Shown piece after piece: positions 17,057-46,140 of a stretch of 64,000 nucleotides of DNA (within the stretch, counting starts at the first letter, position 1; the number at the start of each line of letters is the position of its first letter). Location of the stretch: positions 155,189 through 219,188 of IMG/VR virus record IMGVR_UViG_3300033388_007730; one strand, 5' to 3'. The notes beneath the pieces are model-generated. The model did no database searches, was not told the DNA's origin, and saw nothing but the letters and a program-made list of their open reading frames with translations. The position numbers and the translations under genes were made by a program.

Positions 17057-17383
17057 ATGAGTGATACGTATGGAATAAATGAAGGAATATCTCGTTTTGA
17101 GATAATGGATCTCTGGACTGATGAAGAAAGAGAAAAATTAGAGTCAGATAGAGAAGAAAAAAGAGAAAAGTTACAATCAGACAGAGAAGAAGCAGGTTGT
17201 TGCGAGTATTGTGGATCTAAAAATAACCCACATTGGGTTCCATCTATGACGAGATATCATTGGGATAAGTACAAAAAATTGGAAGATCCTAACAGAGACT
17301 TATTTTATTGTGATGAGTGTGAAGAGTATCATATGGAGTATTGGAATAACATGTGGGAAGAGTATAGTGCTTCGAGGTGGTGA
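17057..17383 (+). CDS. Zinc-ribbon hypothetical protein with RFEIMDL motif near N-terminus
   Basis: CEYC..CDEC. Confidence 0.7.
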   Translation: MSDTYGINEGISRFEIMDLWTDEEREKLESDREEKREKLQSDREEAGCCEYCGSKNNPHWVPSMTRYHWDKYKKLEDPNRDLFYCDECEEYHMEYWNNMWEEYSASRW

Positions 17384-17384
17384 A

Positions 17385-17680
17385 ATGGATAAAATAATAG
17401 TTGTACATGATAAAAATTCAGAATATGATGCATCACCGTTTCATGATGTTCCATATGAGAAATTAAATTTTTCTGTTAAAATTAATGCTCATTTGATAGT
17501 ATATGTTTCTGAACAGAATCAAGAAGTGACTATAATTAAAAATAGATGGGGATCGAATGATGATCCTAAGATAATTAGTTTTTTGAAAATTTTTACGAGA
17601 TAGAAAATTCTCCTCCGATTGAAGAAGAGATAGAACCAGAAATTCCAGTTAATAGATTTGAGATGATGGATTTTGAATGA
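17385..17680 (+). CDS. Hypothetical protein; zero frame stops at 17603, -1 frame from T6 at 17579-17584 extends to ...NRFEMMDFE
   Basis: GAGGTG RBS; extension stop overlaps next ATG (ATGA). Confidence 0.55.
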
Positions 17681-18039
17681 GTAAACATAATGAACAATTT
17701 AGATTTGATATAATAGATTTTGGAGATGATATAGAAAATGCTTATCAGGCAAAATTAGAGAGAGAAGAGAAAAAGAGAGTAGAGAAAGTTGTTAGATTAG
17801 CAACGGATTGTAAACGCAAGGTAGAAGAAAAAGGAGTTTGTGAGGGTTGTGGCGGGAAAGAGAAATTGAGATGGGTTTGTAACGAAGAAGCCTACTTATG
17901 TTATGATTGTTATTATAAAGGTATGCGACAGTGGGAAGATCTTTGTTGCTCTCATGGTCGTAGCGCCGAAGATATTCCTGGTTTTATATATGATGATGAA
18001 TGGGAGTATCTTTGGGAAAAAGAGCAAAAAAAAACTTAA
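17677..18039 (+). CDS. Zinc-ribbon hypothetical protein with RFDIIDF motif near N-terminus
   Basis: CEGC..CYDC; same layout as 17057 ORF. Confidence 0.7.
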   Translation: MSKHNEQFRFDIIDFGDDIENAYQAKLEREEKKRVEKVVRLATDCKRKVEEKGVCEGCGGKEKLRWVCNEEAYLCYDCYYKGMRQWEDLCCSHGRSAEDIPGFIYDDEWEYLWEKEQKKT

Positions 18040-18092
18040 AAAGAGTTAAGTATACTTGACGCATTTGAAGTATTTGAAAAGGATCTAGGAAT

Positions 18093-18323
18093 ATGAGTAA
18101 AATAGAAGAAATAGAAAAAGAGAATGTAGCTTTAAGAGGATGTATAGATTCTGCTTTAATGACATTAGCAGATTATGATGGATACAGAGAAGCAGAAGGT
18201 TTGATGGGACTTATAGATGATGTTGTTGAGACTTTACAATCTGGTTGTTCAAATAGAATAGTAGATTTTGAGAGCAGGAAAGTTTGTCCTTTGTGTTTTC
18301 AAAGATTAAAGAAAGAAGAGTAA
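18093..18323 (+). CDS. Hypothetical protein
   Basis: AGGA RBS; abuts next gene. Confidence 0.6.
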   Translation: MSKIEEIEKENVALRGCIDSALMTLADYDGYREAEGLMGLIDDVVETLQSGCSNRIVDFESRKVCPLCFQRLKKEE

Positions 18324-18324
18324 A

Positions 18325-19371
18325 ATGTTACTTACAAGAGAACAATTTAGAAATGGAGTACTTGAGAGAGATAACAATCAGTGTGTTATCTGCGGAAGCT
18401 CTACAGATCTTGTGGCACATCACATTATGGAGAGAAGATTATTTGAAGATGGTGGATACTACATTTCAAATGGTAGCACACTCTGCGAAGAACATCATAT
18501 TCTTGCTGAGCAAACTGTTTTGTCTTGTGAAGAGATTAGAGAAGCAGCAGGAATTACAGATATTGTTTTACCTCCTCATCTGTATCAAGATACTAAGTAT
18601 GAAAAATGGAGTAACATCATACTCTCTGATGGTCGTAGGTTAAAAGGTGAGTTGTTCTTTGATGAGTCTGTTCAGAAGATACTTAAAGCAGGCGATGTAT
18701 TAAAGCATTTTTGCAAATATGTCAAATATCCAAGAACCTGGCATCTCTCACACAGTCATAAGGTTCATCGTAATGATATGCAGTTAGATTCTAATAAACA
18801 GTTTAATGGCAAGAAAGTAGTAGTCACTATTAAGATGGATGGTGAAAACACCACAATGTATAATAACTATCTTCATGCTCGTTCAGTTGATAGTGCTAAT
18901 CACCCTACAAGAGGTTGGGTTAAAAGAATACATGCTGAGATGGGATGGAATATTCCTGAAGGTTGGAGAGTCTGTGCTGAGAATATGTATGCTAAACACA
19001 CTGTTGAATATGAGAACCTTGAATCTTATCTTCTTGTTTTTTCTATATGGAATGAAAAGAATGAGTGTTTGTCATGGGATGATACTATTGAATGGGCAGA
19101 ACTGTTAGAACTTTCTATGACTCCTGTTCTTTATGTGGGAGAATGGGATGAAAAAAAGATTCATTCTTTATGCCCAAAAGAATATAATGGAGATAAAGTT
19201 GAAGGATATGTGGTCCGTTTATTTGAATCTTTTACATATGGGGATTTCAGAAAATCAGTAGCCAAATATGTGAAGCCAGAATTTGCAGATCAACTCGGAA
19301 CTGGGAGCAGCCACTGGAAGTATAAAAAGATAATTCCCAACAAATTACAAAAGAAAGTTGTTGAAAAGTGA
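18325..19371 (+). CDS. HNH domain fused to ATP-dependent RNA ligase
   Basis: RD...C..C...AHH....NG.TLC..HH, then KYPRT.HL, KMDGEN, EGYVVR, AKYV. Confidence 0.85.
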   Translation: MLLTREQFRNGVLERDNNQCVICGSSTDLVAHHIMERRLFEDGGYYISNGSTLCEEHHILAEQTVLSCEEIREAAGITDIVLPPHLYQDTKYEKWSNIILSDGRRLKGELFFDESVQKILKAGDVLKHFCKYVKYPRTWHLSHSHKVHRNDMQLDSNKQFNGKKVVVTIKMDGENTTMYNNYLHARSVDSANHPTRGWVKRIHAEMGWNIPEGWRVCAENMYAKHTVEYENLESYLLVFSIWNEKNECLSWDDTIEWAELLELSMTPVLYVGEWDEKKIHSLCPKEYNGDKVEGYVVRLFESFTYGDFRKSVAKYVKPEFADQLGTGSSHWKYKKIIPNKLQKKVVEK

Positions 19372-19625
19372 TTAAAGCTATGTTAGAATTAGAGCTAGTG
19401 TATCCTTATAACAGGTCAATGGGTACTTTAGCTGACTTTTGTGGTTTATGGGATTGTGGCATACTTGGTGGCGGGACTAATAGTGTAAAAGCTTTAATAT
19501 CCATGCCTTCTTTTCATTTTAAAAAGATATTTGGTACAAATCCAAGAGTTGGAAATTATGGTATCCCTAGTGGAATGGAAAAATTTATAGCAGGTGTGAA
19601 AGTTAAAGAAATAATAACAATTTAA
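19368..19625 (+). CDS. Hypothetical protein
   Basis: GTGA overlap with upstream stop. Confidence 0.55.
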   Translation: MIKAMLELELVYPYNRSMGTLADFCGLWDCGILGGGTNSVKALISMPSFHFKKIFGTNPRVGNYGIPSGMEKFIAGVKVKEIITI

Positions 19626-19636
19626 GAGAGAAAGAA

Positions 19637-20242: not shown

Positions 20243-20253
20243 GGGATGGATTT

Positions 20254-20568
20254 ATGAAGTATGTATTAGCTGGAAAATCAGAAACTTTTAATTTGTATTG
20301 TCATATAAATAAACAGCAACCTGATAAAGATGTAATATATGCGAAAACAGAGAAAATATTTAATGACACAACTGACATTGATACGATAGTATTATTGTCT
20401 GGATGGTGGGGAAAAAGTTGGGCTAAAAAGGCTCTTAAAGGTATTCTTGAAGTATATCCTTGTATAGATATAGAGTATTTGGATGGGCAATTTGGAGAGA
20501 AAGAGAGAGAGGGTATTTCTGCTCAGAAGAGTACACTTACCCGATTTGATTTAATAGATTTGGAGTAA
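20254..20568 (+). CDS. Hypothetical protein ending RFDLIDLE
   Basis: ORF with RBS; shared C-terminal motif. Confidence 0.7.
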   Translation: MKYVLAGKSETFNLYCHINKQQPDKDVIYAKTEKIFNDTTDIDTIVLLSGWWGKSWAKKALKGILEVYPCIDIEYLDGQFGEKEREGISAQKSTLTRFDLIDLE

Positions 20569-20609
20569 AAGTAGTGAAGAAATAGTTATGATAGCTGCTG
20601 AGGAGAATA

Positions 20610-21609: not shown

Positions 21610-22083
21610 ATGATGAATTACAATCGGGTTATGTTGATGGGCAGACTCACTGCCAATCCAATTCTCAGGGTTTTTGATGACGGTAATAAAGTTGTGAACT
21701 TTTCTATCGCTACTAATAGAACTTGGAAGGGTGCTGATAACCAAAGAAGAGAAGAAACGTGTTTTGTGGCTTGCAAGGCTTTTGGAACAAGAGCACAGGC
21801 AATTAACGACTATTTCTCAAAGGGAAGACCTTTATTTATTGAGGGTCATCTTTACCAGGAAAAGTGGGTAAATAAGGATACTCAAAAAAATATGACTAAG
21901 TTGCGTGTAGTAGTCGATAATTTTGAATTTCTTGATAAGAAGAGTTCAACAGAAGATGGAATTCCAGCATCTGCTGGTAATTCGTTTATGTCTGGTTCCG
22001 CAGATGATTTTGATGCTGTTGTAGATGATGCTGTTACTACAGAAGTTACTTCTACTAACAAAGATGTTGCTGACAGGAGTTAA
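21610..22083 (+). CDS. ssb: Single-stranded DNA-binding protein
   Basis: N.V.LMGRL..P, FSIATNR.W, KG..LFIEG.L; lacks terminal PF tail. Confidence 0.93.
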   Translation: MMNYNRVMLMGRLTANPILRVFDDGNKVVNFSIATNRTWKGADNQRREETCFVACKAFGTRAQAINDYFSKGRPLFIEGHLYQEKWVNKDTQKNMTKLRVVVDNFEFLDKKSSTEDGIPASAGNSFMSGSADDFDAVVDDAVTTEVTSTNKDVADRS

Positions 22084-22085
22084 TT

Positions 22086-26007: not shown

Positions 26008-28380
26008 ATGGAAGATATAAATATCAAATCATTATTACAAGGTGGAATTCGTAAAGATCCAGAAGATGATAGAGATTTTATTTTTACAACACCACATATT
26101 CCTGATCATACTGTCTTGGGAAGTGCTGATTCTATTCCATTAAAAATAGATCATTCTAATAAGATGGGTTCGGTTAAGTTTCAAGGTGCGTTAGGATGCC
26201 ATGATATTAGAACAGAAATACTTACAGAAAAAGGTTGGAAACTATTTAAAGATTTGGATAAAGAAGAAAAAGTAGCTACCGTTAATCCTAATACCCATGA
26301 AATTGAATATCAAGAGCCAATTAATTATTTAGAATATGATTATGAAGGAGATATGTATTATTTTCACCATAAAAGTGGATTAGATGCTATGGTTACTCCT
26401 AATCATAAGATGTATGTCAAGAAATGGGATAATAAAAATATGACATTAAAAGAAGAATTTGAATTCATTGAAGCACAAAATATGGGTTGGTATTCTGGAT
26501 TGTTGACAAAAATTGATTGGGATGGGATCTCTCCCAAAACAATGAAAATGCCAGATGTTGAGATAGGACAAAGAAATGGAAGCAAAAAACAATCTATAAG
26601 AATAGGTAAAGAAATTGATACTACTAATTTCATTACATTTTTGGGATTATATTTAGCAGAGGGCTGTTGTTATCGTCCTGAGGGTAGTGGATCTTACAGA
26701 ATTGAGATCGCCGCTAGTGACAATAATGATAGGAAAAATGAAGTTATTGAAATTATTGATGATTTGCCGTATAAATATACTATTTATCATGATAGGATAA
26801 CAATATGGAATAAATCTTTATATACATTTCTTAAGCCTTTTGGGAATGTTTATACTAAGTCAGTACCAAGATTTGTTATGGATTTGAATAAAAAGGATAT
26901 CGCTGCATTTATGTATGGTTATTATTTAGGAGATGGATCTTTTCATGATAATGGGGCAAGGACAGGGTATTCGGTATCTGAACATTTAATTGATGATCTT
27001 CAAGAACTATCTTTGAAAATAGGGGTATATAGTAGGAAAAAAAGTAGATCACCTAGAATTGCATATATTAAAGGTAGAAAAATTTTTGGTAAAGAAAGTT
27101 ATGAACTTCATGAAAGACAAATAGATACGAAGTTGTCGATAGATAGAAATAAATATTCATCCAAAGTTCCATATAATAATAAAGTATATTGTGTAGAAGT
27201 CCCTAATCACATACTTATTACTAGAAGGGGTGGTTGTATTCTAATTTCTGGCAATTCGTGCGTAGCGTTTGCAGCTTGTGCTTTAAAAGAGTGGCAAGAA
27301 ACAATAGAACATGAAAAGGAAGTTTTGGCAGGGAAAAAAGATCATAGAGAAGGTAAAGAATATAATTTGTCTGAACAGTGGATTTATTGGAATTGTAAAA
27401 AAATAGATCCATGGCCTAATTCTGAAGGAACAAATCTGAGATCAGCTATGAGAGTATTAAATAAGATTGGAGTTCCTACCGAACAAGCTTGGGGTTACAC
27501 TGATGATAAGGTGAACATTGGTGAACCTGAAAGCTGGGCATATATGATAGCAAGGTGGAATTTAATAGGGTCTTATTGGAGAATATCAGGATTAGATCAA
27601 ATTAAAAAAGCATTGATCGAGAGTCCTATTATTATTGGGATGGCTTGTTTTAGAGAAATGTATGGTAATTTAGAACATGGTTTAATACCTTATCCTGCTA
27701 ATCCTGGAGAAGTAATGTCTCATCATGCTGTTTGTGTTGTTGGTTATGATGAAGAGAAAAAACTCTTAAAATTTAAAAATAGTTGGTCTAAGTTCTGGGG
27801 AGATGTTGGTTATGGATATATACCTTATGATTATGTAAGAGATTTTGTATGGGATGCGTGGATTGCTAGAGATATTAGTGTAACTCATGAAATGCTTGAA
27901 GGTACTAGATTATTGGTAGGTGCAGATGTACCAACAGTAATAGAGATAGCTGAGACACCACTTATACAAAAAGATACAGAAGAGAATTTTTCTTTTGTAG
28001 GATTTAAGTATCCTTCTCTTTTAGATACTTTTTCTATTATTAAAGATATTTTTGGAGTTCCAGAAATAGAGATATTTAGAGCTTCTAAAAAGGTGGGAGT
28101 TAAATTAGAAGATTCTTCATCTATTAACTTATTCTGTAAAAAATATTTTGCTGAGTTTAGAAAAGAATCTGTAAAGAAATATGGATTTGAAGTCGATGTT
28201 ATTAAAGTGGATGATGAATATCCAATTATTGGTATTTGTTTGTGTGAAAAAGAAATTAGTGATAAATTTGATGAAAATCAGATAAAGATAGAAGATGTAA
28301 TGAAAAAAGTGGTTGGCATGAGAGATATATTGGCTCTTGGCAAAGATATAATAATTTACAATGGTGTGAGAAAATATTAA
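26008..28380 (+). CDS. Papain-family (C1A) cysteine protease containing an intein
   Basis: After intein removal QGALG/SCVAFA; LSEQWIY, HAVCVVGYD, KNSW...WGD.GY. Confidence 0.9.
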   Translation: MEDINIKSLLQGGIRKDPEDDRDFIFTTPHIPDHTVLGSADSIPLKIDHSNKMGSVKFQGALGCHDIRTEILTEKGWKLFKDLDKEEKVATVNPNTHEIEYQEPINYLEYDYEGDMYYFHHKSGLDAMVTPNHKMYVKKWDNKNMTLKEEFEFIEAQNMGWYSGLLTKIDWDGISPKTMKMPDVEIGQRNGSKKQSIRIGKEIDTTNFITFLGLYLAEGCCYRPEGSGSYRIEIAASDNNDRKNEVIEIIDDLPYKYTIYHDRITIWNKSLYTFLKPFGNVYTKSVPRFVMDLNKKDIAAFMYGYYLGDGSFHDNGARTGYSVSEHLIDDLQELSLKIGVYSRKKSRSPRIAYIKGRKIFGKESYELHERQIDTKLSIDRNKYSSKVPYNNKVYCVEVPNHILITRRGGCILISGNSCVAFAACALKEWQETIEHEKEVLAGKKDHREGKEYNLSEQWIYWNCKKIDPWPNSEGTNLRSAMRVLNKIGVPTEQAWGYTDDKVNIGEPESWAYMIARWNLIGSYWRISGLDQIKKALIESPIIIGMACFREMYGNLEHGLIPYPANPGEVMSHHAVCVVGYDEEKKLLKFKNSWSKFWGDVGYGYIPYDYVRDFVWDAWIARDISVTHEMLEGTRLLVGADVPTVIEIAETPLIQKDTEENFSFVGFKYPSLLDTFSIIKDIFGVPEIEIFRASKKVGVKLEDSSSINLFCKKYFAEFRKESVKKYGFEVDVIKVDDEYPIIGICLCEKEISDKFDENQIKIEDVMKKVVGMRDILALGKDIIIYNGVRKY
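26197..27255 (+). mobile_element. Contiguous intein (353 aa) with LAGLIDADG endonuclease
   Basis: Starts CHDIRTEILT, block B VTPNH, LGLYLAEG and GYYLGDG, ends VYCVEV...SGN before Ser. Confidence 0.92.
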
Positions 28381-28441: not shown

Positions 28442-28823
28442 GGGGACGACAGGATTGACTGGATAGGTAGAAAATTGAATTGCATGTCAGAGATGGTAGT
28501 TGGCTCTGTAAAAAATCTACTAAAAAGTTTAATTGCAAACAGTTACGCAATGGCTGCTTAAGCAGCAGGAGGGTGGCATAGCCTACCTTCCACCGATGTC
28601 TGTAAGGGAGTTTCCTGCTGGAACTTACAGGCTAATTTAGGCAGGATAGCCGAGAAACATTTTCTCATGGTGTGATTGGCGACAAGTCCCGATAAGGGGA
28701 TGAGATAGCGAAAGTTAGGGTTAGTCCGTTGTTCCTAACATAGTGAAAAAAAAACAACGGACTATACATGTAGATGTTTGATTTGAAATATCACAGGACG
28801 AGGCTTCAATGCCTCCGTCTCCA
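28442..28823 (+). ncRNA. ssrA: tmRNA; tag reading frame ANSYAMAA (28535-28561); CCA not encoded
   Basis: Acceptor stem GGGGACG/CGTCTCC+A with G3:U, T-arm GAGGC-TTCAAT-GCCTC, tag ending AA-stop. Confidence 0.92.
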
Positions 28824-28853
28824 TTATGATGAAGTTTTTTTAAGGATGTAATA

Positions 28854-35670: not shown

Positions 35671-35674
35671 TATT

Positions 35675-35997
35675 ATGCCTATACCACAATATTTAAGAGG
35701 TCTGGTTGATACTGATTTGTTAGTAGTAACTAATAATTTGTTTCGTTATATAAATGCAGAATTACGCGATCATGCAGCTGATTTTGTTGTGTATGGAGAA
35801 ATATCGGTAGATATCCGAGAGATGGATAATCATGAAGGATATTTTGATTTAGATTTTTTGAGAGGAAAATTTGGGATATTGAATCTAATGAAGAAGATTA
35901 TGGTTTAGTATTTACGGAAAAAGGGAAAAATAAGGTAATAGCAAGTGATGATGATGACAGTATAACAAGAAGTGAATTAATAGATTTAGAGGAATAA
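35675..35997 (+). CDS. Hypothetical protein; zero frame stops at 35908, -1 frame from T6 at 35854-35859 extends to ...TRSELIDLEE
   Basis: Extension stop directly abuts ATG 35998. Confidence 0.55.
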
Positions 35998-36945: not shown

Positions 36946-37548
36946 ATGTTATTAATTATAGATTTAGAAGCCACTTGCTGGGATAGAATTGAGAACAGAC
37001 AGAGAGAAGATATGGAAGTTATTGAAATTGGTGGTGCTCTGCTAATGGATGGACAAATTAAGCCAGAATCAAGAGATGATTATATCCCTACATTTTCAAT
37101 CTTTGTGAAGCCTAAAAAGAACCCGATTTTATCCGATTTTTGTAAGAATTTAACCTCTATTAAACAAGAGGATGTTGATGGTGCTAATCTCTTTCCAGAG
37201 GCTCTAGGATCGTTTCTATTAAACGTTGGCGTTTATTTGGGGGCAGAGTCCATAAGTAATATAATATGGGGTTCCTGGGGCAGATATGACCATAATCAGG
37301 TATCACAGGATTGTGCTCTTCATGGTCTTAAATATCCTTTTGGGAAGCATTGGAACATAAAAAGAGCTTATTCTGAGAGCAGAGGAGTTAAAAAAGGATT
37401 TGGATTAGCTAAAGCATTGAAGCAACTGGACTTACGATTTGAGGGCACTCATCATAGAGGAATTGATGATGCTATTATGATTTCTAAAGTAACTAGACAA
37501 GTTTTAGGTGAAAGTTATATGAGGTTTAAAAATGACCACTCGTTATGA
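36946..37548 (+). CDS. DEDDh 3'-5' exonuclease, ERI-1/KapD-like
   Basis: IIDLEATCW, E.IEIG, LS.FC..LT.I.Q, HRGIDDA. Confidence 0.88.
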   Translation: MLLIIDLEATCWDRIENRQREDMEVIEIGGALLMDGQIKPESRDDYIPTFSIFVKPKKNPILSDFCKNLTSIKQEDVDGANLFPEALGSFLLNVGVYLGAESISNIIWGSWGRYDHNQVSQDCALHGLKYPFGKHWNIKRAYSESRGVKKGFGLAKALKQLDLRFEGTHHRGIDDAIMISKVTRQVLGESYMRFKNDHSL

Positions 37549-37882
37549 TGATATGATTAGACGAGAAGAACGTGAAAGACTGTATTGGGCTAGACTAAAT
37601 GAACGTGATCTGAATTACAGGAATGAATACGAATGTCATCCTATTCCTTCACCTTCTACTAACGATATGGCTGCTGAACATATTCGTTATCTTGAGACAA
37701 AAATTGAAGAGTTGCAGAGACATATTTCAGAATTAGCAAATGTGAATTCTCAAACTATTTGGAAGAGAGATGCATGTAAAACAGCGGCGAAAGAACTGAA
37801 GGAGGAGAATGAAAAATTAAAAGAACAAATAAAGAAGTTAAATGAATATGATAAATTTGATATTATGGATTTAGAATTATGA
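37532..37882 (+). CDS. Coiled-coil hypothetical protein ending KFDIMDLEL
   Basis: GAGG RBS; shared motif. Confidence 0.7.
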   Translation: MTTRYDDMIRREERERLYWARLNERDLNYRNEYECHPIPSPSTNDMAAEHIRYLETKIEELQRHISELANVNSQTIWKRDACKTAAKELKEENEKLKEQIKKLNEYDKFDIMDLEL

Positions 37883-38451
37883 TTAGATTTGGAAGTGAAA
37901 TAAAAATAATGAATGCAGCATCAAAAAGAAAGTGGGTTGTACAACCAGTTGGTCCAGTTTCTTTATTTTATCAATATTTTAGAGATGTAGATCTTGAGTA
38001 TGAACCACCAGGAGCTTTACATATTCCTAAATTTGGAGATGTTAATTTTAAGATTTTAACAAAGTATTATTATAGAATTGATAAAGATGAGAATGATCCT
38101 AACTCTTTTTCTAGAAGAGTAGCTGCTTTTGTTGTTGATACTACAGAATATGGTCAAAAAGATCTTGAAATATTTTTATTTCCAATTAGTGTATATGGTC
38201 AGATAGTAGATGCTCCTGGTGCTGCTGGAGAATTTTCCTGGGAGATTACAAAAACAGGTAAGGCGATGCAAACTAGATACCATTCCCATCAGATGCCAAG
38301 AATACCGATTTCAGAAAAAGAGCAAAAAGTTATTGACAGTACTATGGAAGAGGTATCCGTATTAGATGTTATGACTCGTAGAATGAAAGTTTATACTACT
38401 AAGAGTTACACCACTTTTGATAGATTTGATATTTTGGATTTAGACGATTGA
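37879..38451 (+). CDS. Hypothetical protein (possible phage OB-fold SSB-like) ending RFDILDLDD
   Basis: EITKTG...TRY resembles phage SSB segment; shared motif. Confidence 0.55.
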   Translation: MIRFGSEIKIMNAASKRKWVVQPVGPVSLFYQYFRDVDLEYEPPGALHIPKFGDVNFKILTKYYYRIDKDENDPNSFSRRVAAFVVDTTEYGQKDLEIFLFPISVYGQIVDAPGAAGEFSWEITKTGKAMQTRYHSHQMPRIPISEKEQKVIDSTMEEVSVLDVMTRRMKVYTTKSYTTFDRFDILDLDD

Positions 38452-38525
38452 GTTCTGATGATTTCAATAGAGTGAACTACCTCGAAAAATAAGTTTAATA
38501 GATTTGAAGTTATGGAGATAGAGTA

Positions 38526-38969
38526 GTGGCGATTACAAGAGAAGAGGCTAGAGATGAATATCTGAAAAGAGTCTATAAGATTTTTTTGGAATGTGAAAAA
38601 TTTATAGATACAGCTCTAGTTAATAATTTCAATAAGTTAAAAGAAAGTGGTACATTAAATATAAGTGAAAAAAGAATAATGGGCTATAGCACAGATTTTG
38701 AATTTCAAGATAGATATAGAAAACAATTAGTCTCCCTTATATTAGAAAAATATTCTGATTGGAAGGTAGTTTATGATAATGGAATGGCTACATTTTCTTT
38801 TCATTATAAAGAAGAAAAAGAAGAAAATTTAATTTCTCTACTTACTAATTTAGAAGAGAGATTTAAGGGAATGGATATTGATGAAGATGATGATGAAGAG
38901 GATGATGAAGAAATATTAGATGATAGTTTTTTTGATGAAGGATATTCTAATGAAGATGTTCCTTTTTAA
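38526..38969 (+). CDS. Hypothetical protein with acidic tail ending EDVPF
   Basis: GGAG RBS, GTG start; RFKGMDID precedes tail. Confidence 0.7.
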   Translation: MAITREEARDEYLKRVYKIFLECEKFIDTALVNNFNKLKESGTLNISEKRIMGYSTDFEFQDRYRKQLVSLILEKYSDWKVVYDNGMATFSFHYKEEKEENLISLLTNLEERFKGMDIDEDDDEEDDEEILDDSFFDEGYSNEDVPF

Positions 38970-39005: not shown

Positions 39006-39479
39006 ATGGATGTAATAATATGTAAAAATTGTGGTAGGAATAGTTATTATAGTTATTATGGATTTTGTAATATCTTCTGCTGTGCTGATTTTGCCCATAA
39101 ACATAATCTCTCTGTTAAGGAAGCGACAGACGACATAAGAGGCGAGAGAATCGAAGAGTTGGAATTAGATCTAAAATGTATGGAAAGTGATAGAAATTAT
39201 TATGAGGATATGGCGTATGAGTGTCGTCGTTATGAAGCAATGTATGATGAGGTAAAAGGAGATATGAAGCTCCTAAAAAAGTTTGAACATGCTGAAAAAA
39301 CCTTAAAAGTACATAAAGATATGGAATCTATTAAAAGTAGATTATGTTTAAGAGAAAAAAAGATTAATGAATTAAGAGACAAAATAGATAAATTAGAAGA
39401 AATCTGTCAGAAGCTAAGAGCAGAGAATAAGATTCTTAATAGCAAATATACTCGTTATGAGATAATAGAGTTATTTTAA
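39006..39479 (+). CDS. Zinc-finger plus coiled-coil protein ending RYEIIELF
   Basis: CKNC..FC..CC. Confidence 0.7.
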   Translation: MDVIICKNCGRNSYYSYYGFCNIFCCADFAHKHNLSVKEATDDIRGERIEELELDLKCMESDRNYYEDMAYECRRYEAMYDEVKGDMKLLKKFEHAEKTLKVHKDMESIKSRLCLREKKINELRDKIDKLEEICQKLRAENKILNSKYTRYEIIELF

Positions 39480-39885: not shown

Positions 39886-40284
39886 ATGGTAATAAATAAT
39901 TTAAAAGGATTACGTAAATATGGAATACTAAAAGAGGGAGACATAGTTGTATTTTATATTGATGGCAAAAAGATAAAATATTCAGTGAATGTTGCTGAAA
40001 ATACCGAGTACGGGTGGGTTTATTTGAACTGTACTGGTGATTTTAATCGTCTTATCTTCAAAATTTTAGGATTAGATGCTGAAAAAATATGTAAGGAAGA
40101 ATATGGGTATGCTCTAGAAAGAGAAGCTGATTGGCCTGCTGATTGGCCTGCTGATTGGCCTTGGGCTAAACGTAATGATTTTGAAGTAGTAACAAGAGTA
40201 GTTGAAAGATTATATAAAGAGATGGGACAAATATGTGAGGATGAAGTAGAGACAGATAGGTTCTCTCTTATAGATTTTGATTAA
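39886..40284 (+). CDS. Hypothetical protein with (ADWP)x3, ending RFSLIDFD
   Basis: ORF; shared motif. Confidence 0.7.
   Translation: MVINNLKGLRKYGILKEGDIVVFYIDGKKIKYSVNVAENTEYGWVYLNCTGDFNRLIFKILGLDAEKICKEEYGYALEREADWPADWPADWPWAKRNDFEVVTRVVERLYKEMGQICEDEVETDRFSLIDFD
40126..40161 (+). repeat. Perfect 12-nt tandem repeat gctgattggcct x3
   Basis: Direct reading. Confidence 0.9.
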
Positions 40285-40296: not shown

Positions 40297-41097
40297 ATGA
40301 GTAGTAGTTTAATTATACAAGTTAGTGAAATTAAAGACGTAAGAAATCATCCAAATGCTGATAGACTTGATATTATCTCTATTAAAGGTAAAGGATGGGA
40401 GACAATTGTTAAGAGAGATGAGTATAAGGTAGGAGATGTAGTTATTTATATTCCCACAGATGTTATTCTTCCTCTTGAATTGGTAGAGAAGCTTGGGATT
40501 GCGAATTACTTAGCTGGAAAGCAGAAGAATAGAGTTAAGTGCGCAAGACTCCGTGGTGAGATGTCTTATGGTTTGGTTATTCCTAATGAAAAGAATTGGG
40601 AAGTAGGACGAGATGTTGCGGCAGAATTGGGTATTGTAAAATACGAGCCTCCTGTCAGAGCTATGGCTGGTGACGCTGCTCCAGAGGATTCAACTTTTCA
40701 TCGTTATACTGATATTGAGAATATCAATAACTTTCCTGATATTTTCAAAGATGGTGAGATGGTTGTTGCTACAGAAAAAATTGATGGATGTTTTAGATAT
40801 GATCAAAAGGTTTCTCTTGTCAACGGAGAGCAAATTTCTATCTCAGAAGTTGAGATTGGAGATATGGTTCTTTCTTATGATGAAAAAGAGGGCGAATTTG
40901 TGGCATCTAAAGTTGAGGATGTTATTATTCAAAATGTCTCTAAACAATGGGTAGAATTATCGTTTGATAATGGAAAAGAAATTGTTTGTACTGCTGATCA
41001 TTTATTCTTAACTAAGAACAGAAGATGGGTAGAGGCTGGTGATCTGGAAGAAGAAGATGAATTAGTTACGATGGATGAAGAATTTGAAAATAAATAA
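40297..41097 (+). CDS. DRB0094-family RNA ligase N-fragment fused to IntN (40789-41094)
   Basis: HPNADRLD, LRG..SYGL, KYEPP, TEKIDG then CFRYD..CTADH. Confidence 0.88.
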   Translation: MSSSLIIQVSEIKDVRNHPNADRLDIISIKGKGWETIVKRDEYKVGDVVIYIPTDVILPLELVEKLGIANYLAGKQKNRVKCARLRGEMSYGLVIPNEKNWEVGRDVAAELGIVKYEPPVRAMAGDAAPEDSTFHRYTDIENINNFPDIFKDGEMVVATEKIDGCFRYDQKVSLVNGEQISISEVEIGDMVLSYDEKEGEFVASKVEDVIIQNVSKQWVELSFDNGKEIVCTADHLFLTKNRRWVEAGDLEEEDELVTMDEEFENK

Positions 41098-41156
41098 GAG
41101 AATAATCTCTACTGGTTAGAATATATATAGAAAGAGTTAAGCCAGTGGAGATTATT

Positions 41157-41283
41157 ATGGTAAAAAACAATTAAATCTATGTTTAGAATATGGGAAAAAG
41201 ATATAAAAAAAGATTTAATGTCACAGATCGAAAGGATTAGAAGTGAAATTGATAAGAAAAAGGCTGCTCGAACAAAGTTATAA
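41157..41283 (+). pseudogene. Remnant of deleted Vsr/DUF559-like endonuclease between split-intein halves
   Basis: RBS plus MVKNN stop, then FRIWEKDIKK...KL stop overlapping IntC start. Confidence 0.5.
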
Positions 41284-41971
41284 GTGCTGGGATCTAATTA
41301 TTGAAGGAGATCATCATAATTATTTAGTGGAGGGTGCGGTTGTTCATAACAGCAATAATAGGGTAGGTTTTGAGATTTCAGAGCCAGATCAGGATGGAAG
41401 TGTTTATGTTGAAATGAAAGCTGGTTCTAATAAGTTGAAGAGAAAACGTCCTCCAACAGAAAAAATGGCAGAGAATATTTATTGGTTTTCTCAATCTCTT
41501 GACTCTGTGAAGGGGTTACTCAATCATCTTGCTGAAGATGTTGGAGTTAAAAAGACTGTCGTTCTTTATGGTGAGGTTTATGGCAGAGTTCGTGGTGGTC
41601 ATAAGTCTCTTCATTATGGAAAGCCTGGAACTTTGAACTTTGCAGCATTTAGTTTGAAGATTGATGGTAAGTATGTTTCTTGGGATGTTTTTAAACGTCT
41701 GTGTGAGATTTTTGATGTACCTACTGTCCCTGTTGTTGGTATTTTTCCATTTAGCATGGAAAGAGCAAGAGAGTTAGCAACTGGTGATTCTCTTCTTGCA
41801 GCTAAGAATGGCACAAAGCATATGAGAGAAGGAATTGTTCTTTGTGCTTTTGAAGAGAGAGATGAAATGAAGACCAGGAGAGCTATTTTAAAGATGCTTA
41901 ATCCTGATTACCTTATCCTTAAAAATAAGAGTTATGCTAAGGGTGAGGCTACTGATTTTACAGATATGTAA
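41243..41971 (+). CDS. IntC (36 aa, 41243-41350) fused to RNA ligase C-fragment
   Basis: WDL.IEG.HHNYLVEGAVVHN then Ser; YGEVYG, REGIV, LK..NPDYL. Confidence 0.88.
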   Translation: MKLIRKRLLEQSYKCWDLIIEGDHHNYLVEGAVVHNSNNRVGFEISEPDQDGSVYVEMKAGSNKLKRKRPPTEKMAENIYWFSQSLDSVKGLLNHLAEDVGVKKTVVLYGEVYGRVRGGHKSLHYGKPGTLNFAAFSLKIDGKYVSWDVFKRLCEIFDVPTVPVVGIFPFSMERARELATGDSLLAAKNGTKHMREGIVLCAFEERDEMKTRRAILKMLNPDYLILKNKSYAKGEATDFTDM

Positions 41972-41977
41972 TATGAT

Positions 41978-42013: not shown

Positions 42014-42029
42014 ATTTGAGAGGTAAGCT

Positions 42030-42434
42030 ATGTTGGTATATTGGGTTGTTGGATGTGTGTTAGAGTATCTACTTATTGGGTTAGTTACAGGCGGTATCCT
42101 ATTAAAAAGCGAAAGGAAATGTCTAGACAAAATTGAGATAGGAGAAGACATTTTTATTCCGATGTTTCTTTGGCCTATTTTTGTTATATTTTGTATTTGT
42201 GATGGGGCTAGTTGGGTAGTAAAAAACATTTTTAGGTTCATAGCTCTTTATATATTTAAAATTCCAGCAACAACTCTACTCGCTAGTCAACCTGATGATG
42301 GAGGTTTTGTACAGGGCACATCAGGTGGAGGTAGTAATCCACCGCCTTCTACTCCTAAACCAAATATAACTCCACCATCGCAAAAAAAGGATGAAGTGCC
42401 AACTTCAAGAGCTAGTCTCATAGATATAGATTAA
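42030..42434 (+). CDS. Membrane protein with Pro-rich linker ending RASLIDID
   Basis: Hydrophobic segments; shared motif variant. Confidence 0.7.
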   Translation: MLVYWVVGCVLEYLLIGLVTGGILLKSERKCLDKIEIGEDIFIPMFLWPIFVIFCICDGASWVVKNIFRFIALYIFKIPATTLLASQPDDGGFVQGTSGGGSNPPPSTPKPNITPPSQKKDEVPTSRASLIDID

Positions 42435-42436
42435 TT

Positions 42437-43455: not shown

Positions 43456-43466
43456 GAGGTAGAATA

Positions 43467-43673
43467 ATGGATAAGCAAATACACAAGGCGATAAAAACTC
43501 TGAATAAGATAGGAGATGCTATTCAAGGTATAAGAGAAATAGGATTTGATGTTGAGAATCTTTCTAAGAAATTAAGGAATGCTGAACTTGAGATTTTACT
43601 TGCCATTGATTCTATGAAAGGTAAAGAAGAAGAAGACAGAGGAAAAACTAAAATCATGAAGAGGGAGATGTAA
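43467..43673 (+). CDS. Hypothetical protein
   Basis: GAGG RBS. Confidence 0.6.
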   Translation: MDKQIHKAIKTLNKIGDAIQGIREIGFDVENLSKKLRNAELEILLAIDSMKGKEEEDRGKTKIMKREM

Positions 43674-44621: not shown

Positions 44622-44630
44622 GAGATGGAA

Positions 44631-44825
44631 ATGGGACATTATGATGATGGCATGAGTTGAGAAAGGGAGAAACATGAAAAGAAGATGAAGAAGGAGTATA
44701 CGAGTTGGATTATAGAAGAACTCGAAAGTAAAACAAGTGCAGAATTAAGAGATATTCATACACTTGTAAAAAGTATAAGTGAGGTAAGAGGTGCGATGAA
44801 ATTAGTAAAAGAGTTAACAAAGTAA
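44631..44825 (+). pseudogene. Small ORF with in-frame TGA at 44658
   Basis: GGAG RBS, MGHYDDGMS-stop-EREK... open to 44825. Confidence 0.45.
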
Positions 44826-44848
44826 ATAATTTTTTAATAGGAGAAAAT

Positions 44849-45148
44849 ATGAATATTAAGTTGTTAAAGTTAATCACAGGTGAAGAAGTTATATGCGAAC
44901 TTAAAGATGAAGGAGATGATGTGGTTATGAAAAATCCTATCATTATGATGCCACAAAGAACAGAGGATGGGAAAGCTGATATAGCTATGGTAATGAAGTG
45001 GATGCCATCATCTGTAGACGAGTCTTTCAAAATAAGTAAACAGCATGTTATGTATATATCAGAACCACATATAGAGTTAGCTAATTATTATAGTGAGACA
45101 TTTGGAAGTGGGATTGTACTTCCTGAGAAAGGTTCTATTCAAATATAA
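44849..45148 (+). CDS. Phage Sm-like domain protein
   Basis: IKLLKLITGEEVI, NP, W.P, Y...FGSGIVLP. Confidence 0.65.
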   Translation: MNIKLLKLITGEEVICELKDEGDDVVMKNPIIMMPQRTEDGKADIAMVMKWMPSSVDESFKISKQHVMYISEPHIELANYYSETFGSGIVLPEKGSIQI

Positions 45149-45149
45149 A

Positions 45150-45497
45150 ATGATAGGTAAATTAATAAAATTTATTATTGCTTGGTTTAGAATACCTAGA
45201 GGACCATACTGTTACACGATTAAAGAGGTAATTAGAGACCCTTCAGGTAATGCTCCTTCAATGATTCGCTCTAAAGTTTGTCCTTACTGGGGGATTAGGA
45301 AAGATTTGCCAGCACAGGCTAATGGATATTGTAGGTATTTAAGAGTCACAGATGTAGATCAGAATAATGATCCAGAATCAGAGTTCGTCTGCACTGTAAA
45401 GGAGACAGGTGAGAAGAGTGTTCTTAAAGCTCCAGATATACCATTTGGTACAAGTCGTTTGTGGGATCAATGTAAAGAGTGTGGAATAAAGGAATAG
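45150..45497 (+). CDS. Cys-rich hypothetical protein
   Basis: IP.GPYCY, CPYW, GYC.YL, LWDQCKECG. Confidence 0.65.
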   Translation: MIGKLIKFIIAWFRIPRGPYCYTIKEVIRDPSGNAPSMIRSKVCPYWGIRKDLPAQANGYCRYLRVTDVDQNNDPESEFVCTVKETGEKSVLKAPDIPFGTSRLWDQCKECGIKE

Positions 45498-45975
45498 GTG
45501 AACTACCTCCTCCATAAAGGGGAGGCTTTTTAGATCTTTTACAACTGAATAATGACTAGATTGAGCCAGCTGTGCTTTTCTACAGTTACTTACATCAACT
45601 ATATTTTCTAAAGTAGAAAATATAGTTGATACAGAGGTTTCTGTATCCCTAAGCATTGTATTTCTACGTTCCGTAGAAATTAAAGTTTTTAATCCTTCAG
45701 TTTCGATACATTGAGCACTTTTCAAGTCTCTATCTTCTGTATAGCCACAAGAACAGTTATAAGTTCTCTGCCATACAGGTAGTTTATTTTTAGCTTTACA
45801 GACAGGGCAAAGTTGAGTAGAGGGAAAGAACTTATCAACCATTACAGATGTATGTGCTTTTTTCTTTAAAGCACTAATTATTCCACCTATAGCAGTATTT
45901 TGAATTTTCTTTCCGTGTCTCCCAGCTTTCCAGGCTTTGATGCTCTCATCCTGAAAGATGATATATTCAAGGTTG
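45498..45975 (-). mobile_element. tnpB: Truncated IS200/IS605-family element: TnpB C-terminal fragment with intact right end
   Basis: FPSTQLCPVC..R.Y.C.CG...DRD..SA; minus strand ends AAGCCTCCCCTTTATGGAGGAGGTAGTTCAC. Confidence 0.8.
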
Positions 45976-46140
45976 ATTTCGGATTGTGGAGGGATTTGGA
46001 TAAGAAGGACTCGTAACGTTACAGTAGATAAAGATGATGCTAAACTTATCCATGAGTTTAGTAGGAATAGAGTTAAGAGGTTGAGAATGATGAGCAAATC
46101 AAATCCAGTATCTAGAGAAGAGTTAATAGATTTAGATTAG
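45958..46140 (+). pseudogene. Probable 3' remnant of a gene ending SREELIDLD
   Basis: Begins inside the TnpB fragment; shared motif variant. Confidence 0.5.

What the first reader, a model, noticed from the sequence alone, without database searches (positions are those of the whole stretch)
17093..46140. Shared peptide tag [RK]F[DES][ILM][ILM]D[LFI][DE] on 12 unrelated phage ORFans
Seen in sequence: RFEIMDLW (17093), RFEMMDFE-stop (17654), RFDIIDFG (17701), RFDLIDLE-stop (20542), RSELIDLEE-stop (35968), KFDIMDLEL-stop (37853), RFDILDLDD-stop (38422), RFKGMDIDE (38859), RYEIIELF-stop (39453), RFSLIDFD-stop (40258), RASLIDID-stop (42408), REELIDLD-stop (46114). Nine are C-terminal, two N-terminal, one precedes an acidic tail. 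Carriers are zinc ribbons, coiled coils, a membrane protein and others with no other similarity; I did not see it on the recognisable enzymes. Codons differ (cga/aga/cgt/agg), so conservation is at protein level, and it often follows a Pro-rich or acidic linker. Inference: a short linear docking/targeting code that recruits many small effectors or adaptors to one hub, for example the phage AAA+ ATPase at 46896-49853, a host protease/unfoldase, a sliding clamp or RNA polymerase. This is the best candidate for an undescribed system here.
Basis: partly seen in the sequence, partly recalled or inferred. Interest (0 to 1): 0.92.

Follow-up and report, generated by a model that had tools for sequence, protein, structure and literature searches.

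The report
Shared C-terminal docking tag, huge phages
Dozens of otherwise unrelated small proteins of a clade of huge bacteriophages end in the same seven-residue peptide (R-F-E/D-I/L-L/M/I-D-L), a conserved docking tag that looks most like a sliding-clamp-binding motif and has not been described in any paper I could find.

Summary
All 12 motifs are at the stated coordinates and I found a 13th at 38500. A strict pattern occurs 7 times on the + strand, against 0.013 expected from shuffling, and never on the - strand.

It is selected at protein level:
- Orthologues in a 386-kb relative keep the tag (70/80 residues identical) while the rest of each protein is 47-69% identical.
- Every substitution stays within the residue class, and synonymous codons vary.

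The tag extends well beyond the window. Relatives of 298, 351 and 548 kb carry tens of tagged small genes in tandem arrays. Their consensus is [NSDT]RF[ED]ILD[LI], usually ending exactly at the stop. After removing the tag, 86 carriers fall into 54 BLAST families.

The receptor is not proven. The best-supported candidate is the phage's own bacterial-type beta sliding clamp:
- The tag has the hydrophobic-acid-hydrophobic-hydrophobic core and terminal placement of clamp-binding motifs, and resembles the RB69 polymerase tail SLFDMFDF.
- The phage's split DnaE ends in a tail that aligns with the E. coli alpha clamp-binding motif.
- Tagged gene arrays lie between the dnaE fragments in three genomes.

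Verdict: high interest, hub unresolved.

The parts
17093..17116 (+). Tag RFEIMDLW, N-terminal (residues 13-20) in carrier 17057-17383 (108 aa, C-terminal zinc ribbon)
   Evidence: PSSM 24.2 bits. Identical 8/8 in the orthologue L081:1204-1497. The zinc ribbon is 50% identical to phiCbK gp288, which lacks the tag.
17654..17680 (+). Tag RFEMMDFE plus stop, in the stop-to-stop piece 17579-17680, which has no start codon. It continues ORF 17385-17603 after a -1 shift at T_TTT_TTG (17579-17585).
   Evidence: The relative has one uninterrupted 118-aa ORF with T7 where the window has T6. PSSM 22.6 bits.
17701..17724 (+). Tag RFDIIDFG, N-terminal (residues 9-16) in carrier 17677-18039 (120 aa, zinc ribbon, paralogue of 17057-17383)
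   Evidence: PSSM 20.3 bits. The orthologue L081:3458-3832 has RFDIMDM. Paralogy.
20542..20568 (+). Tag RFDLIDLE plus stop, at the C-terminus of carrier 20254-20568 (104 aa)
   Evidence: PSSM 23.7 bits. 8/8 identical in the orthologue with 2 synonymous codon changes.
35968..35997 (+). Tag RSELIDLEE plus stop, in the stop-to-stop piece 35848-35997, which has no start codon. It follows ORF 35648-35908 after a -1 shift at T_TTT_TTG (35854-35860).
   Evidence: The relative has two intact paralogues (137 and 134 aa) ending RSELLDFEE and RSELIDLEE.
37853..37882 (+). Tag KFDIMDLEL plus stop, at the C-terminus of coiled-coil carrier 37532-37882 (116 aa)
   Evidence: PSSM 19.0 bits. The orthologue has KFDIMDVE. 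Only sub-threshold coiled-coil Pfam matches.
38422..38451 (+). Tag RFDILDLDD plus stop, at the C-terminus of carrier 37879-38451 (190 aa, globular ORFan)
   Evidence: Orthologues at 72% and 70% identity end ERFDILDLDD and NRFDILDLED.
38500..38526 (+). Orphan tag RFEVMEIE plus stop, in a 16-codon piece with no start codon. It is a remnant of two membrane-protein genes present in the relative.
   Evidence: L007:10835-11353 and 11353-11871 end RFEVMEID and RFEVMDVE.
38859..38882 (+). Doubtful internal motif RFKGMDID in 38526-38969 (147 aa). It is followed by an acidic tail ending EDVPF, which resembles the SSB C-terminal tip.
   Evidence: Lowest PSSM score, 13.2 bits. A similar internal DRFGNIDL occurs in the 548-kb phage.
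39453..39479 (+). Tag RYEIIELF plus stop, at the C-terminus of carrier 39006-39479 (157 aa, zinc ribbon plus coiled coil)
   Evidence: PSSM 17.9 bits. The orthologue has RYEIIDLF.
40258..40284 (+). Tag RFSLIDFD plus stop, at the C-terminus of carrier 39886-40284 (132 aa)
   Evidence: PSSM 21.6 bits. Two paralogues in the relative end RFSLIDLD and RFSLIDFD, with 3 synonymous changes.
42408..42434 (+). Tag RASLIDID plus stop, at the C-terminus of membrane-protein carrier 42030-42434 (134 aa), after a Pro-rich linker
   Evidence: PSSM 16.5 bits. Orthologues end RSDLIDMDW (relative B) and NRFDMLDMEGEIK (548-kb phage).
46114..46140 (+). Tag REELIDLD plus stop, closing the truncated gene 45958-46140. 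Its 5' part is overlapped by a TnpB-like ORF on the - strand (45378-46097).
   Evidence: The intact 90-aa orthologue L007:18210-18482 has an 8/8 identical tag.
46896..49853 (+). It is split by an intervening NUMOD3/TnsA-like endonuclease ORF (47939-48853).
   Evidence: Pfam. The orthologue in the relative is an uninterrupted 571-aa protein. The AF2 model matches YjoB and Bcs1. No specific link to the tag.
50060..51799 (+). Ro60 (TROVE + vWA), the next gene downstream of the AAA+ gene; a low-probability alternative receptor through its vWA metal site
   Evidence: Pfam. The same AAA-Ro60 pairing is found in three relatives.

Best explanation
The motif is a short linear docking peptide. Its consensus is [NSTD]-R-F-[E/D/S]-[I/L]-[L/M/I]-D-[L/I/F], usually within 0-2 residues of the C-terminus. 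It has been appended to many unrelated small proteins of a clade of huge phages.

Shown:
- It is real and enriched.
- It is under protein-level purifying selection.
- It is modular, sitting at the end of linkers enriched in E, K, P and T.
- It is present in several related huge phages and contigs, at tens of copies per genome in three of them.

Inferred (most likely mechanism): it is an extended variant of a clamp-binding motif. Its first five residues (R, hydrophobic or small, acid or Ser, I/L, hydrophobic) would occupy the hydrophobic cleft of the phage-encoded bacterial-type beta sliding clamp, or possibly of the host clamp. The invariant Arg and the trailing D-L would add specificity. Tagged proteins, including zinc ribbons, coiled coils and membrane anchors, would then be tethered to clamps loaded on phage DNA and concentrated at replicating phage genomes.
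For: The motif is real and selected:
- Enrichment is 7 observed against 0.013 expected, with PSSM scores falling into two separate groups.
- Between phage A and phage B the tag is 70/80 identical while the rest of each protein is 47-69% identical. All replacements are conservative. Tag codons show 10 synonymous and 10 non-synonymous differences.
- B carries at least 22 tags in 30 kb.
- An IMG/VR pattern scan found multi-hit contigs of 548, 351 and 298 kb with 55, 18 and 10 tagged proteins of at least 40 aa in the fetched chunks, 23 of them in one 9.85-kb chunk. 70 of 83 C-terminal tags end exactly at the stop.
- 86 carriers fall into 54 BLAST families once the tag is removed.
- Synonymous codons and all three stop codons vary.

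The link to the clamp:
- The phage encodes DnaX, delta and a 421-aa beta clamp just upstream of the window. The clamp's AF2 model has pLDDT 95 and TM-scores of 0.70-0.77 (normalised to the model) and 0.67-0.86 (normalised to the target) to bacterial DnaN structures.
- Clamp-binding motifs are short linear motifs in C-terminal tails, N-termini or loops, with consensus QL[S/D]LF. Position 3 prefers Asp and position 5 accepts F, L or I (PMC11139829). Tag positions 2-5 fit this, including Ser at position 3 in some copies and Ala or Ser at position 2 in the R[SA]EILDL subfamily.
- RB69 gp43 ends KKASLFDMFDF and gp55 ends SLDFLYEDDN. T4 gp43, gp33 and gp55 share interchangeable hydrophobic and acidic C-terminal clamp epitopes on divergent linkers (PMC2988020).
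- The phage's split DnaE ends ...GADIFG, or ...GVESVDMFA in 120 homologues. This tail aligns exactly with the E. coli alpha motif QADMF. The phage delta subunit has ELSCF at the position of E. coli delta AMSLF.
- Arrays of tagged genes lie between the dnaE fragments in three genomes.
- One tagged zinc ribbon is homologous to a phiCbK gene adjacent to a helicase gene.
Against: - No binding test was possible because only monomer structure prediction was available.
- The tag's most conserved residues (R1, F2, D6) are not features of clamp-binding motifs, and the canonical Gln is absent.
- None of the recognised clamp clients carries the tag: delta, DnaX, or any of the 120 DnaE tails (best PSSM 10.6 bits or less).
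- Tens of different clamp clients per genome, several of them membrane proteins, would be unprecedented for a phage.
- Subsite I residue R176 of the E. coli clamp is replaced by Glu in the clamp of phage A. A related phage whose clamp keeps Arg also has tags, so there is no covariation in support.
- Gene adjacency to dnaE could simply reflect a hotspot where ORFans accumulate.
Confidence: 0.4

Rival explanations
1. The tag is a docking peptide, but the receptor is not the clamp. It could be another phage or host hub: the Bcs1/YjoB-like AAA+ ATPase, the vWA metal site of the adjacent Ro60, another replisome protein that binds acidic-hydrophobic tails, RNA polymerase, or a host factor.
For: - The motif has all the hallmarks of a short linear docking motif, but none of them names the partner.
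- In A and B the tag cluster ends 1-2 genes before the AAA+ gene.
- AAA+ and vWA proteins commonly work as pairs, and vWA metal sites bind an Asp flanked by hydrophobic residues. This is my own knowledge and was not tested.
- The conserved R, F and D-L are not explained by the clamp-binding consensus.
Against: - In three relatives the 20 kb around the AAA+ and Ro60 genes hold only 1-3 tags, while the dense arrays lie elsewhere.
- The AAA+ N-domain resembles YjoB and Bcs1, which to my knowledge are not described as binding short linear motifs.
- A scan of one genome from each of 185,579 bacterial and archaeal species for tag-plus-stop DNA gave 70 scattered hits, against about 50 expected by chance, and no recurrent host protein family with this tail.
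Confidence: 0.27
2. The tag is a C-terminal degron. It marks a large set of early small proteins, including membrane proteins, for timed removal by a host or phage AAA+ protease.
For: - Placement is at the extreme C-terminus: 70 of 83 tags have nothing after the core.
- Carriers are small ORFans typical of early genes.
- The set includes both membrane and soluble carriers, a range that FtsH-type proteases can handle (my own knowledge).
Against: - The tail is acidic, unlike the non-polar C-terminal degrons I know of.
- The phage's own tmRNA encodes a classical non-polar tag, ANSYAMAA, unrelated to this motif.
- Conserved N-terminal versions and extensions of 1-3 or more residues are tolerated.
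- No protease partner was seen next to the arrays.
Confidence: 0.1
3. The tag is a virion-loading signal, analogous to encapsulin cargo-loading peptides or the T4 capsid targeting sequence. It would pack a varied set of small proteins into the very large capsid for co-injection.
For: - The architecture is the same as encapsulin cargo peptides: a short C-terminal peptide after a flexible linker on unrelated cargo (my own knowledge).
- Huge capsids have room for such cargo.
- There are tens of carriers per genome.
Against: - The arrays lie among replication, nucleotide-metabolism and RNA-repair genes and not in structural modules.
- Several carriers are integral membrane proteins.
- The sequence is unlike known loading peptides.
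- No structural genes were examined.
Confidence: 0.1
4. The conserved feature is a DNA or RNA element at the 3' end of small gene cassettes, such as a recombination site, a processing site or a coupling signal. The peptide would then be only its translation.
For: - The small genes lie in tandem, same-orientation arrays, each ending in the element, which recalls integron cassettes.
- Leu codons in the tags are almost only TTA or TTG: about 2 CTN among about 78, against 42% genome-wide.
- Orphan tag remnants persist without a gene (38500, L105:3108).
Against: - Arg uses AGA, AGG, CGT, CGA and CGG, and Lys (AAA) replaces it in two copies. E/D, I/L/M and the -1 residue vary freely, and all three stop codons are used.
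- Substitutions respect amino-acid classes and not nucleotides.
- N-terminal copies exist.
- There is nothing on the - strand.
- No conserved flank beyond the tag was evident in the 13 window copies.
Confidence: 0.03

Closest known systems
Bacterial beta-clamp-binding motif (CBM, consensus QL[S/D]LF or QLxLxF)
   Same: - It is a short linear motif found in C-terminal tails, disordered N-termini or loops.
- It has hydrophobic residues at positions 2, 4 and 5 with S, D or E at position 3.
- One hub serves many clients.
- A cognate beta clamp, a delta subunit with ELSCF and a DnaE ending in an A-D-I-F-type tail are all encoded by this phage.
   Different: - Position 1 is an invariant Arg or Lys and not Gln.
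- Two further conserved positions (D6 and hydrophobic 7) follow.
- Carriers are small ORFans and membrane proteins and not replication or repair enzymes.
- There are tens of carriers per genome.
- Binding is untested.
T4/RB69 gp45-binding C-terminal epitope (gp43 ...SLFDMFDF, gp55 ...SLDFLYEDDN, gp33)
   Same: - It is a short hydrophobic and acidic segment at the extreme C-terminus, on a divergent flexible linker.
- It is interchangeable between unrelated proteins, including small transcription factors.
- The RB69 gp43 tail matches the tag's residue classes at 6 of 8 positions.
   Different: - The clamp here is of the DnaN type and not the gp45/PCNA type.
- T4 has a handful of clients and not tens.
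- The tag's Arg is absent from the T4 and RB69 epitopes.
Shared targeting peptides on unrelated cargo (encapsulin cargo-loading peptides, microcompartment encapsulation peptides, the pyrenoid Rubisco-binding motif)
   Same: The logic is the same: one short terminal peptide after a linker addresses many unrelated proteins to a single structure.
   Different: There is no sequence similarity, no compartment or shell is known for these phages, and the gene context is replication and nucleotide metabolism.
ssrA-type C-terminal degrons
   Same: It is a short peptide at the extreme C-terminus recognised by one machine.
   Different: The tag is acidic and hydrophobic, not non-polar. The phage's own tmRNA tag (ANSYAMAA) is unrelated to it.

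Membership tests
Beta-clamp-binding motif (CBM) | A short linear motif located in a flexible C-terminal tail, N-terminus or loop | tested here: met
   In A and B, 31 of 36 tags lie 0-2 (one 7) residues from the stop, 4 are N-terminal and 1 is internal. The preceding 20 residues are enriched in E, K, P and T. In the other phages 83 of 99 are C-terminal.
Beta-clamp-binding motif (CBM) | Gln at position 1 | tested here: not met
   Position 1 is Arg in 34 of 36 tags and Lys in 2 of 36. The review notes that Gln raises affinity but is not essential.
Beta-clamp-binding motif (CBM) | Hydrophobic residues at positions 2, 4 and 5, with S or D preferred at position 3 | tested here: met
   Position 2: F 27, Y 2, S/A/E 7. 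Position 3: E 20, D 11, S 4. Position 4: L/I/V/M 35 of 36. Position 5: M/I/L 36 of 36.
Beta-clamp-binding motif (CBM) | A cognate beta clamp with a conserved binding cleft is present | tested here: met
   TIGR00663 (dnaN) match at E = 6e-8. AF2 model with pLDDT 95 and TM-scores of 0.70-0.77 (normalised to the model) and 0.67-0.86 (normalised to the target) to DnaN structures. The cleft motif G-[ST]-G-x-R-F-A is the most conserved stretch of the family.
Beta-clamp-binding motif (CBM) | Physical binding in the cleft between clamp domains II and III | not testable with these tools
   Only monomer structure prediction was available, and chimeric sequences are not accepted.
Beta-clamp-binding motif (CBM) | Known clamp clients of the same organism carry the same motif | tested here: not met
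   The delta subunit has ELSCF and DnaE ends GADIFG or VESVDMFA. No DnaX, delta or DnaE protein scores above 10.6 bits with the tag PSSM.
T4-type gp45-binding epitope | A hydrophobic and acidic segment at the extreme C-terminus on a divergent linker, shared by unrelated proteins | tested here: met
   compared.
T4-type gp45-binding epitope | A gp45/PCNA-type trimeric clamp is present | tested here: inconclusive
   None was seen in about 108 kb of contig A. The rest of the 219-kb contig was not read.
C-terminal degron (ssrA-like) | A non-polar C-terminal tail (LAA-like) | tested here: not met
   Tags end D-L, D-L-E, D-L-D-D and similar. The phage tmRNA tag ANSYAMAA is different.
Encapsulin or T4 capsid-targeting peptide | Carriers are found inside the capsid and the peptide binds the shell or scaffold | not testable with these tools
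   There are no virion data, and structural genes were not in the sequence read.
DNA-level cassette repeat (integron attC-like) | Nucleotide conservation independent of the reading frame and exceeding amino-acid conservation | tested here: not met
   Synonymous codon use and stop codons vary, replacements keep the residue class, and there are no - strand copies.

The most novel reading that the evidence does not exclude
A whole clade of huge phages (contigs of 219 to 548 kb) uses one seven-residue C-terminal address, RFEILDL-type, to direct a fast-evolving set of tens of small effector-like proteins per genome to a single hub. If the hub is the DNA-loaded sliding clamp, the clamp would serve as a landing pad that concentrates host-takeover or genome-protecting proteins on phage DNA. 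If it is something else, such as the capsid interior, a compartment or an unfoldase, this would be the first general protein-addressing code described for a phage proteome.
Probability: 0.35. Interest if true: 0.95.

Novelty: new variant of a known kind. Interest (0 to 1): 0.86.

Why it matters
Huge phages carry hundreds of small ORFans of unknown role.

- **A handle on many ORFans.** A shared, conserved terminal tag links many of them to one partner. Identifying that single receptor would assign a place of action to tens of proteins per genome.
- **A portable peptide.** The tag would be a portable targeting peptide for these phages.
- **If the receptor is the clamp.** The "toolbelt" idea would extend from a few replication and transcription factors (T4, Mu) to a large accessory proteome. 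It would also define a clamp-binding sequence class without the canonical Gln.
- **A usable marker.** The tag finds relatives and their ORFan arrays in metagenomes: one 24-nt degenerate pattern pulled out the clade from IMG/VR.

Tried and rejected
- **Close relatives in GenBank phages.** None found by megablast or tblastn.
- **Pfam and PHROGs on the carriers.** Only coiled-coil noise and one zinc-ribbon PHROG of unknown function.
- **Is the tag a common bacterial C-terminus that the phage mimics?** A scan of one genome from each of 185,579 bacterial and archaeal species gave 70 scattered hits, against about 50 expected by chance. The few real C-termini were ends of folded domains.
- **AAA+ ATPase as hub by gene neighbourhood.** In three relatives the AAA+/Ro60 neighbourhood is tag-poor. 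The fold is Bcs1/YjoB-like.
- **Charge-swap covariation between clamp residue 187 (Glu in A, Arg in 59 of 69 homologues) and the tag's Arg.** Dropped, because phage L089 probably pairs an Arg-187 clamp with tags. The pairing rests on two proteins sharing the same longest-contig length.
- **RBS or translational-coupling explanation for the motif DNA.** Most copies have no GGA/GGAG, and N-terminal copies exist.
- **Stop-codon reassignment to explain tags without a start codon.** The pieces are in different frames, not separated by in-frame stops.
- **Walking up contig A to find the polymerase.** Four steps found only replisome accessory genes and a large glycosylation cluster. The polymerase was eventually found through the tag-pattern scan.
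- **First DNA pattern scan of IMG/VR (tag, one acidic residue, then stop).** It returned only the window's own contig and two chance hits, because most relatives end the protein directly after the core.

Full report
**What the window is.** The window has 32% G+C, and 82 of 94 called genes are on the + strand. It is the last 64 kb (positions 155,189-219,188) of a 219,188-bp contig, IMGVR_UViG_3300033388_007730 = JGI 3300033388 Ga0370355_1000001. I call this phage A.

The gene content is typical of a huge phage's auxiliary regions:
- a CCA-adding enzyme with an HD domain;
- a PAS histidine kinase and two response regulators;
- ThyX, thioredoxin and SSB;
- RNA ligases;
- an intein-bearing papain-like protease;
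- sigma-like proteins;
- radical SAM, PfkB, an RNase T-like exonuclease, a PRTase and GMP reductase;
- an intron-split AAA+ ATPase;
- Ro60 (TROVE+vWA);
- a tmRNA.

GenBank phages hold no close relative.

**Checking the observation.**
- The strict pattern occurs 7 times on the + strand and never on the - strand. Residue shuffling gives 0.0135. The loose pattern occurs 14 times against 0.35 expected.
- A PSSM built from the instances gives 13-24 bits for every instance and nothing in between on the + strand. About 0.2 hits of 12 bits or more are expected by chance.
- Codons differ between copies.

Caveats:
- The tags at 17654 and 35968 lie in stop-to-stop pieces without a start codon. Each is reachable from the upstream ORF only by a -1 slip on an identical heptamer, T_TTT_TTG.
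- The tag at 46114 closes a gene truncated by a TnpB-like ORF.
- The tag at 38500 is a remnant of lost genes.
- The motif at 38859 is weak and probably specific to its family.

**Conservation.** Carrier 37879-38451 has orthologues at 70-72% identity that keep the tag (ERFDILDLDD, NRFDILDLED). One lies on a syntenic 386,529-bp scaffold, ENA BAEC19-1 scaffold_14, which I call phage B.
- B has at least 22 tagged genes in 30 kb. All are terminal, and they include new families and one tandem duplication...RFELMDFELMDFEL.
- Across 10 orthologous pairs the tag is 70/80 identical and the rest of the proteins 47-69%. Every tag replacement is conservative. Tag codons show 10 synonymous and 10 non-synonymous differences.
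- With the tag masked, the 34 carriers of A and B form 17 BLAST families.
- The zinc ribbon of carrier 17057-17383 is 50% identical to phiCbK gp288, which lies next to a helicase gene and has no tag. The tag is therefore an add-on.

**Reach of the system.** A DNA pattern for "tag core followed directly by a stop" found 54 stretches in IMG/VR.

| Contig | PSSM tags in fetched chunks | Tagged proteins of at least 40 aa |
|---|---|---|
| 3300033145_003233 (547,943 bp) | 60, of which 23 in one 9.85-kb chunk | 55 |
| 3300024259_002152 (350,866 bp) | 23 | 18 |
| 3300035698_029839 (297,710 bp) | 12 | 10 |
| another part of contig A (L105) | 4 | 3 |

- Three smaller contigs had two tags each.
- In the four multi-hit contigs 70 of 83 C-terminal tags end exactly at the stop. 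The consensus is [NSDT]RF[ED]ILD[LI]-COOH and the median carrier length is 99 aa.
- 86 carriers fall into 54 families after tag removal. Four have a TM-like segment and 11 have two or more CxxC motifs.
- Synonymous codons (AGA/AGG/CGT, GAG/GAA/GAT/GAC, ATT/ATA/ATC, TTA/TTG) and all three stop codons vary roughly as in the genome at large. The exception is a near absence of CTN Leu codons.
- Two further NCBI contigs also carry tags: L089 has three, and L084 has one weaker, tag-like C-terminus of 10.6 bits.
- No paper in the searchable library contains these strings.

**Which receptor? The AAA+ ATPase.**
- Its AF2 model (pLDDT 80) matches B. subtilis YjoB and Bcs1 over the N-domain plus AAA architecture.
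- It is directly followed by Ro60 in the window and in all three relatives examined.
- In those three relatives its neighbourhood is tag-poor.
- Nothing specific ties it to the tag.

**Which receptor? The sliding clamp.** Phage A encodes an intein-bearing DnaX, a SigH-like sigma factor, a beta clamp and a delta subunit. This module lies a few kb upstream of the window, with its last gene ending about 1.2 kb before the window start. The clamp's AF2 model has pLDDT 95 and TM-scores of 0.70-0.77 (normalised to the model) and 0.67-0.86 (normalised to the target) to bacterial DnaN structures.

The tag resembles known clamp-binding peptides in form and placement:
- Clamp-binding motifs sit in C-terminal tails, N-termini or loops, with consensus QL[S/D]LF. 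Asp is preferred at position 3 and F, L or I is accepted at position 5 (PMC11139829).
- T4 gp43, gp33 and gp55 share interchangeable hydrophobic and acidic C-terminal epitopes on divergent linkers (PMC2988020).
- RB69 gp43 ends KKASLFDMFDF, which matches the tag's residue classes at 6 of 8 positions.

Replisome evidence from the phages themselves:
- The phage DnaE is split, into three ORFs in phage A.
- Its last fragment ends at the extreme C-terminus in ...GADIFG in A, and in ...KKG[VI]ES[VI]D[MLI]F[AG] in 120 homologues.
- This tail aligns exactly with the E. coli alpha internal motif QADMF.
- The phage delta subunit has ELSCF where E. coli delta has AMSLF.
- In three genomes the arrays of tagged genes lie between the dnaE fragments.

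**Counter-evidence.**
- R1, F2 and D6, the best-conserved tag residues, are not features of clamp-binding motifs.
- No recognised clamp client carries the tag.
- Tens of clients per genome, some of them membrane-anchored, would be unprecedented.
- A Glu-for-Arg change in the clamp cleft of A does not covary with the tags.
- Binding could not be tested with these tools.

**Rivals.** I considered:
- a different hub;
- a degron, which is disfavoured because the tail is acidic and the phage tmRNA encodes an unrelated tag, ANSYAMAA;
- a capsid-loading peptide, for which the gene context and the membrane carriers argue against;
- a DNA-level cassette element, against which codon and stop variation, class-preserving substitutions and N-terminal copies argue.

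**Verdict.** This is a genuine, conserved short peptide tag found across a clade of huge phages and, as far as I can find, undescribed.
- I commit to the clamp-docking mechanism at about 0.4.
- The broader claim, a docking or targeting peptide recognised by one partner, I put at about 0.8.
- It is best filed as a new variant of a known kind, a clamp-binding-type short linear motif.
- A substantial chance remains that it is a more general addressing code.

Noticed in passing
window 28442-28826 (+): A phage-encoded tmRNA (Rfam RF00023, 108 bits). Its tag reading frame, read by eye from the alignment, gives ANSYAMAA. ARAGORN did not report it.
   Followed up: partly
window 17579-17585 and 35854-35860; L089:4740-4795: Three tags are out of frame with their gene.
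- Two in the window need a -1 slip on an identical T_TTT_TTG. At one of them the relative has T7 where the window has T6.
- One in another phage needs a +1 shift just before or at the stop (AAA TAG A -> AGA TTT...).
I cannot tell whether these are programmed recoding, fresh frameshift mutations or assembly errors.
   Followed up: partly
window 45378-46097 (-), 45958-46140 (+): A TnpB-like ORF (Pfam Cas12f1-like_TNB) on the - strand overlaps and truncates a tagged gene that is intact (90 aa) in the relative. The - strand gene 46137-46769 is conserved in the relative (216 aa, no family match).
   Followed up: partly
window 46896-49853: The AAA+ gene is interrupted by a NUMOD3/TnsA-like endonuclease ORF (47939-48853). 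It is uninterrupted in phage B but split in the same way in the more distant phage L089. Many database homologues are about 310-350 aa, which suggests the split is common. Rfam at gathering threshold called no group I intron.
   Followed up: partly
window 40297-41971: The RNA ligase (PHA02142 OB fold plus ligase domain) is a single 360-aa gene in the relative. Here it is in two ORFs: 40297-41097 carries the OB fold plus a Hint/intein N-part, and 41243-41971 carries the ligase domain. This is a broken or split intein.
   Followed up: no
window 38526-38969 and 21610-22083: The 147-aa protein ends in a long acidic tail closing with EDVPF, which resembles the SSB C-terminal tip (DDDIPF-type). The phage's own SSB (157 aa) lacks such a tip. 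This may be an SSB-tail mimic.
   Followed up: no
window 26008-28380; L006:1163-3868; L086:7056-9065: Inteins with LAGLIDADG domains interrupt a papain-like protease, the DnaX clamp-loader subunit and a sugar epimerase. The genome is rich in selfish elements.
   Followed up: no
window 10261-11673 (+), 13996-14893 (-): A PAS histidine kinase and two response-regulator genes are encoded by the phage. The regulators are among the few - strand genes, and at least one is conserved in the relative.
   Followed up: no
L105:1595-6081 (contig A, outside the window); L141; L097: The DnaE polymerase is split into a PHP-plus-palm N fragment and a palm-fingers-HhH C fragment. The C fragment is itself in two ORFs in phage A and in the 298-kb phage, where it carries inteins. 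The protein ends exactly at its clamp-binding tail and lacks the OB and tau-binding C-terminal domains of E. coli alpha.
   Followed up: partly
L006:5779-7041 (clamp, residue 187): In the clamp-cleft motif G-[ST]-G-x-R-F-A (E. coli R176, subsite I), Arg is replaced by Glu only in phage A and its closest relative (2 of 69 homologues). The meaning is unknown.
   Followed up: partly
L086 and L082 (contig A 117,440-138,000): About 20 kb of glycosyltransferases, methyltransferases, sugar epimerases, a radical SAM enzyme and a dTDP-sugar isomerase. This is a large sugar-modification cluster in a phage genome.
   Followed up: no
L136:614-4742 (-) in the 548-kb phage: Five tandem paralogues of about 275 aa, each ending ...LW[KR]xHP[FL][IL]N[ED] and with no Pfam match, lie next to an array of tagged mini-genes. 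This is a second multigene family with a conserved C-terminus.
   Followed up: no
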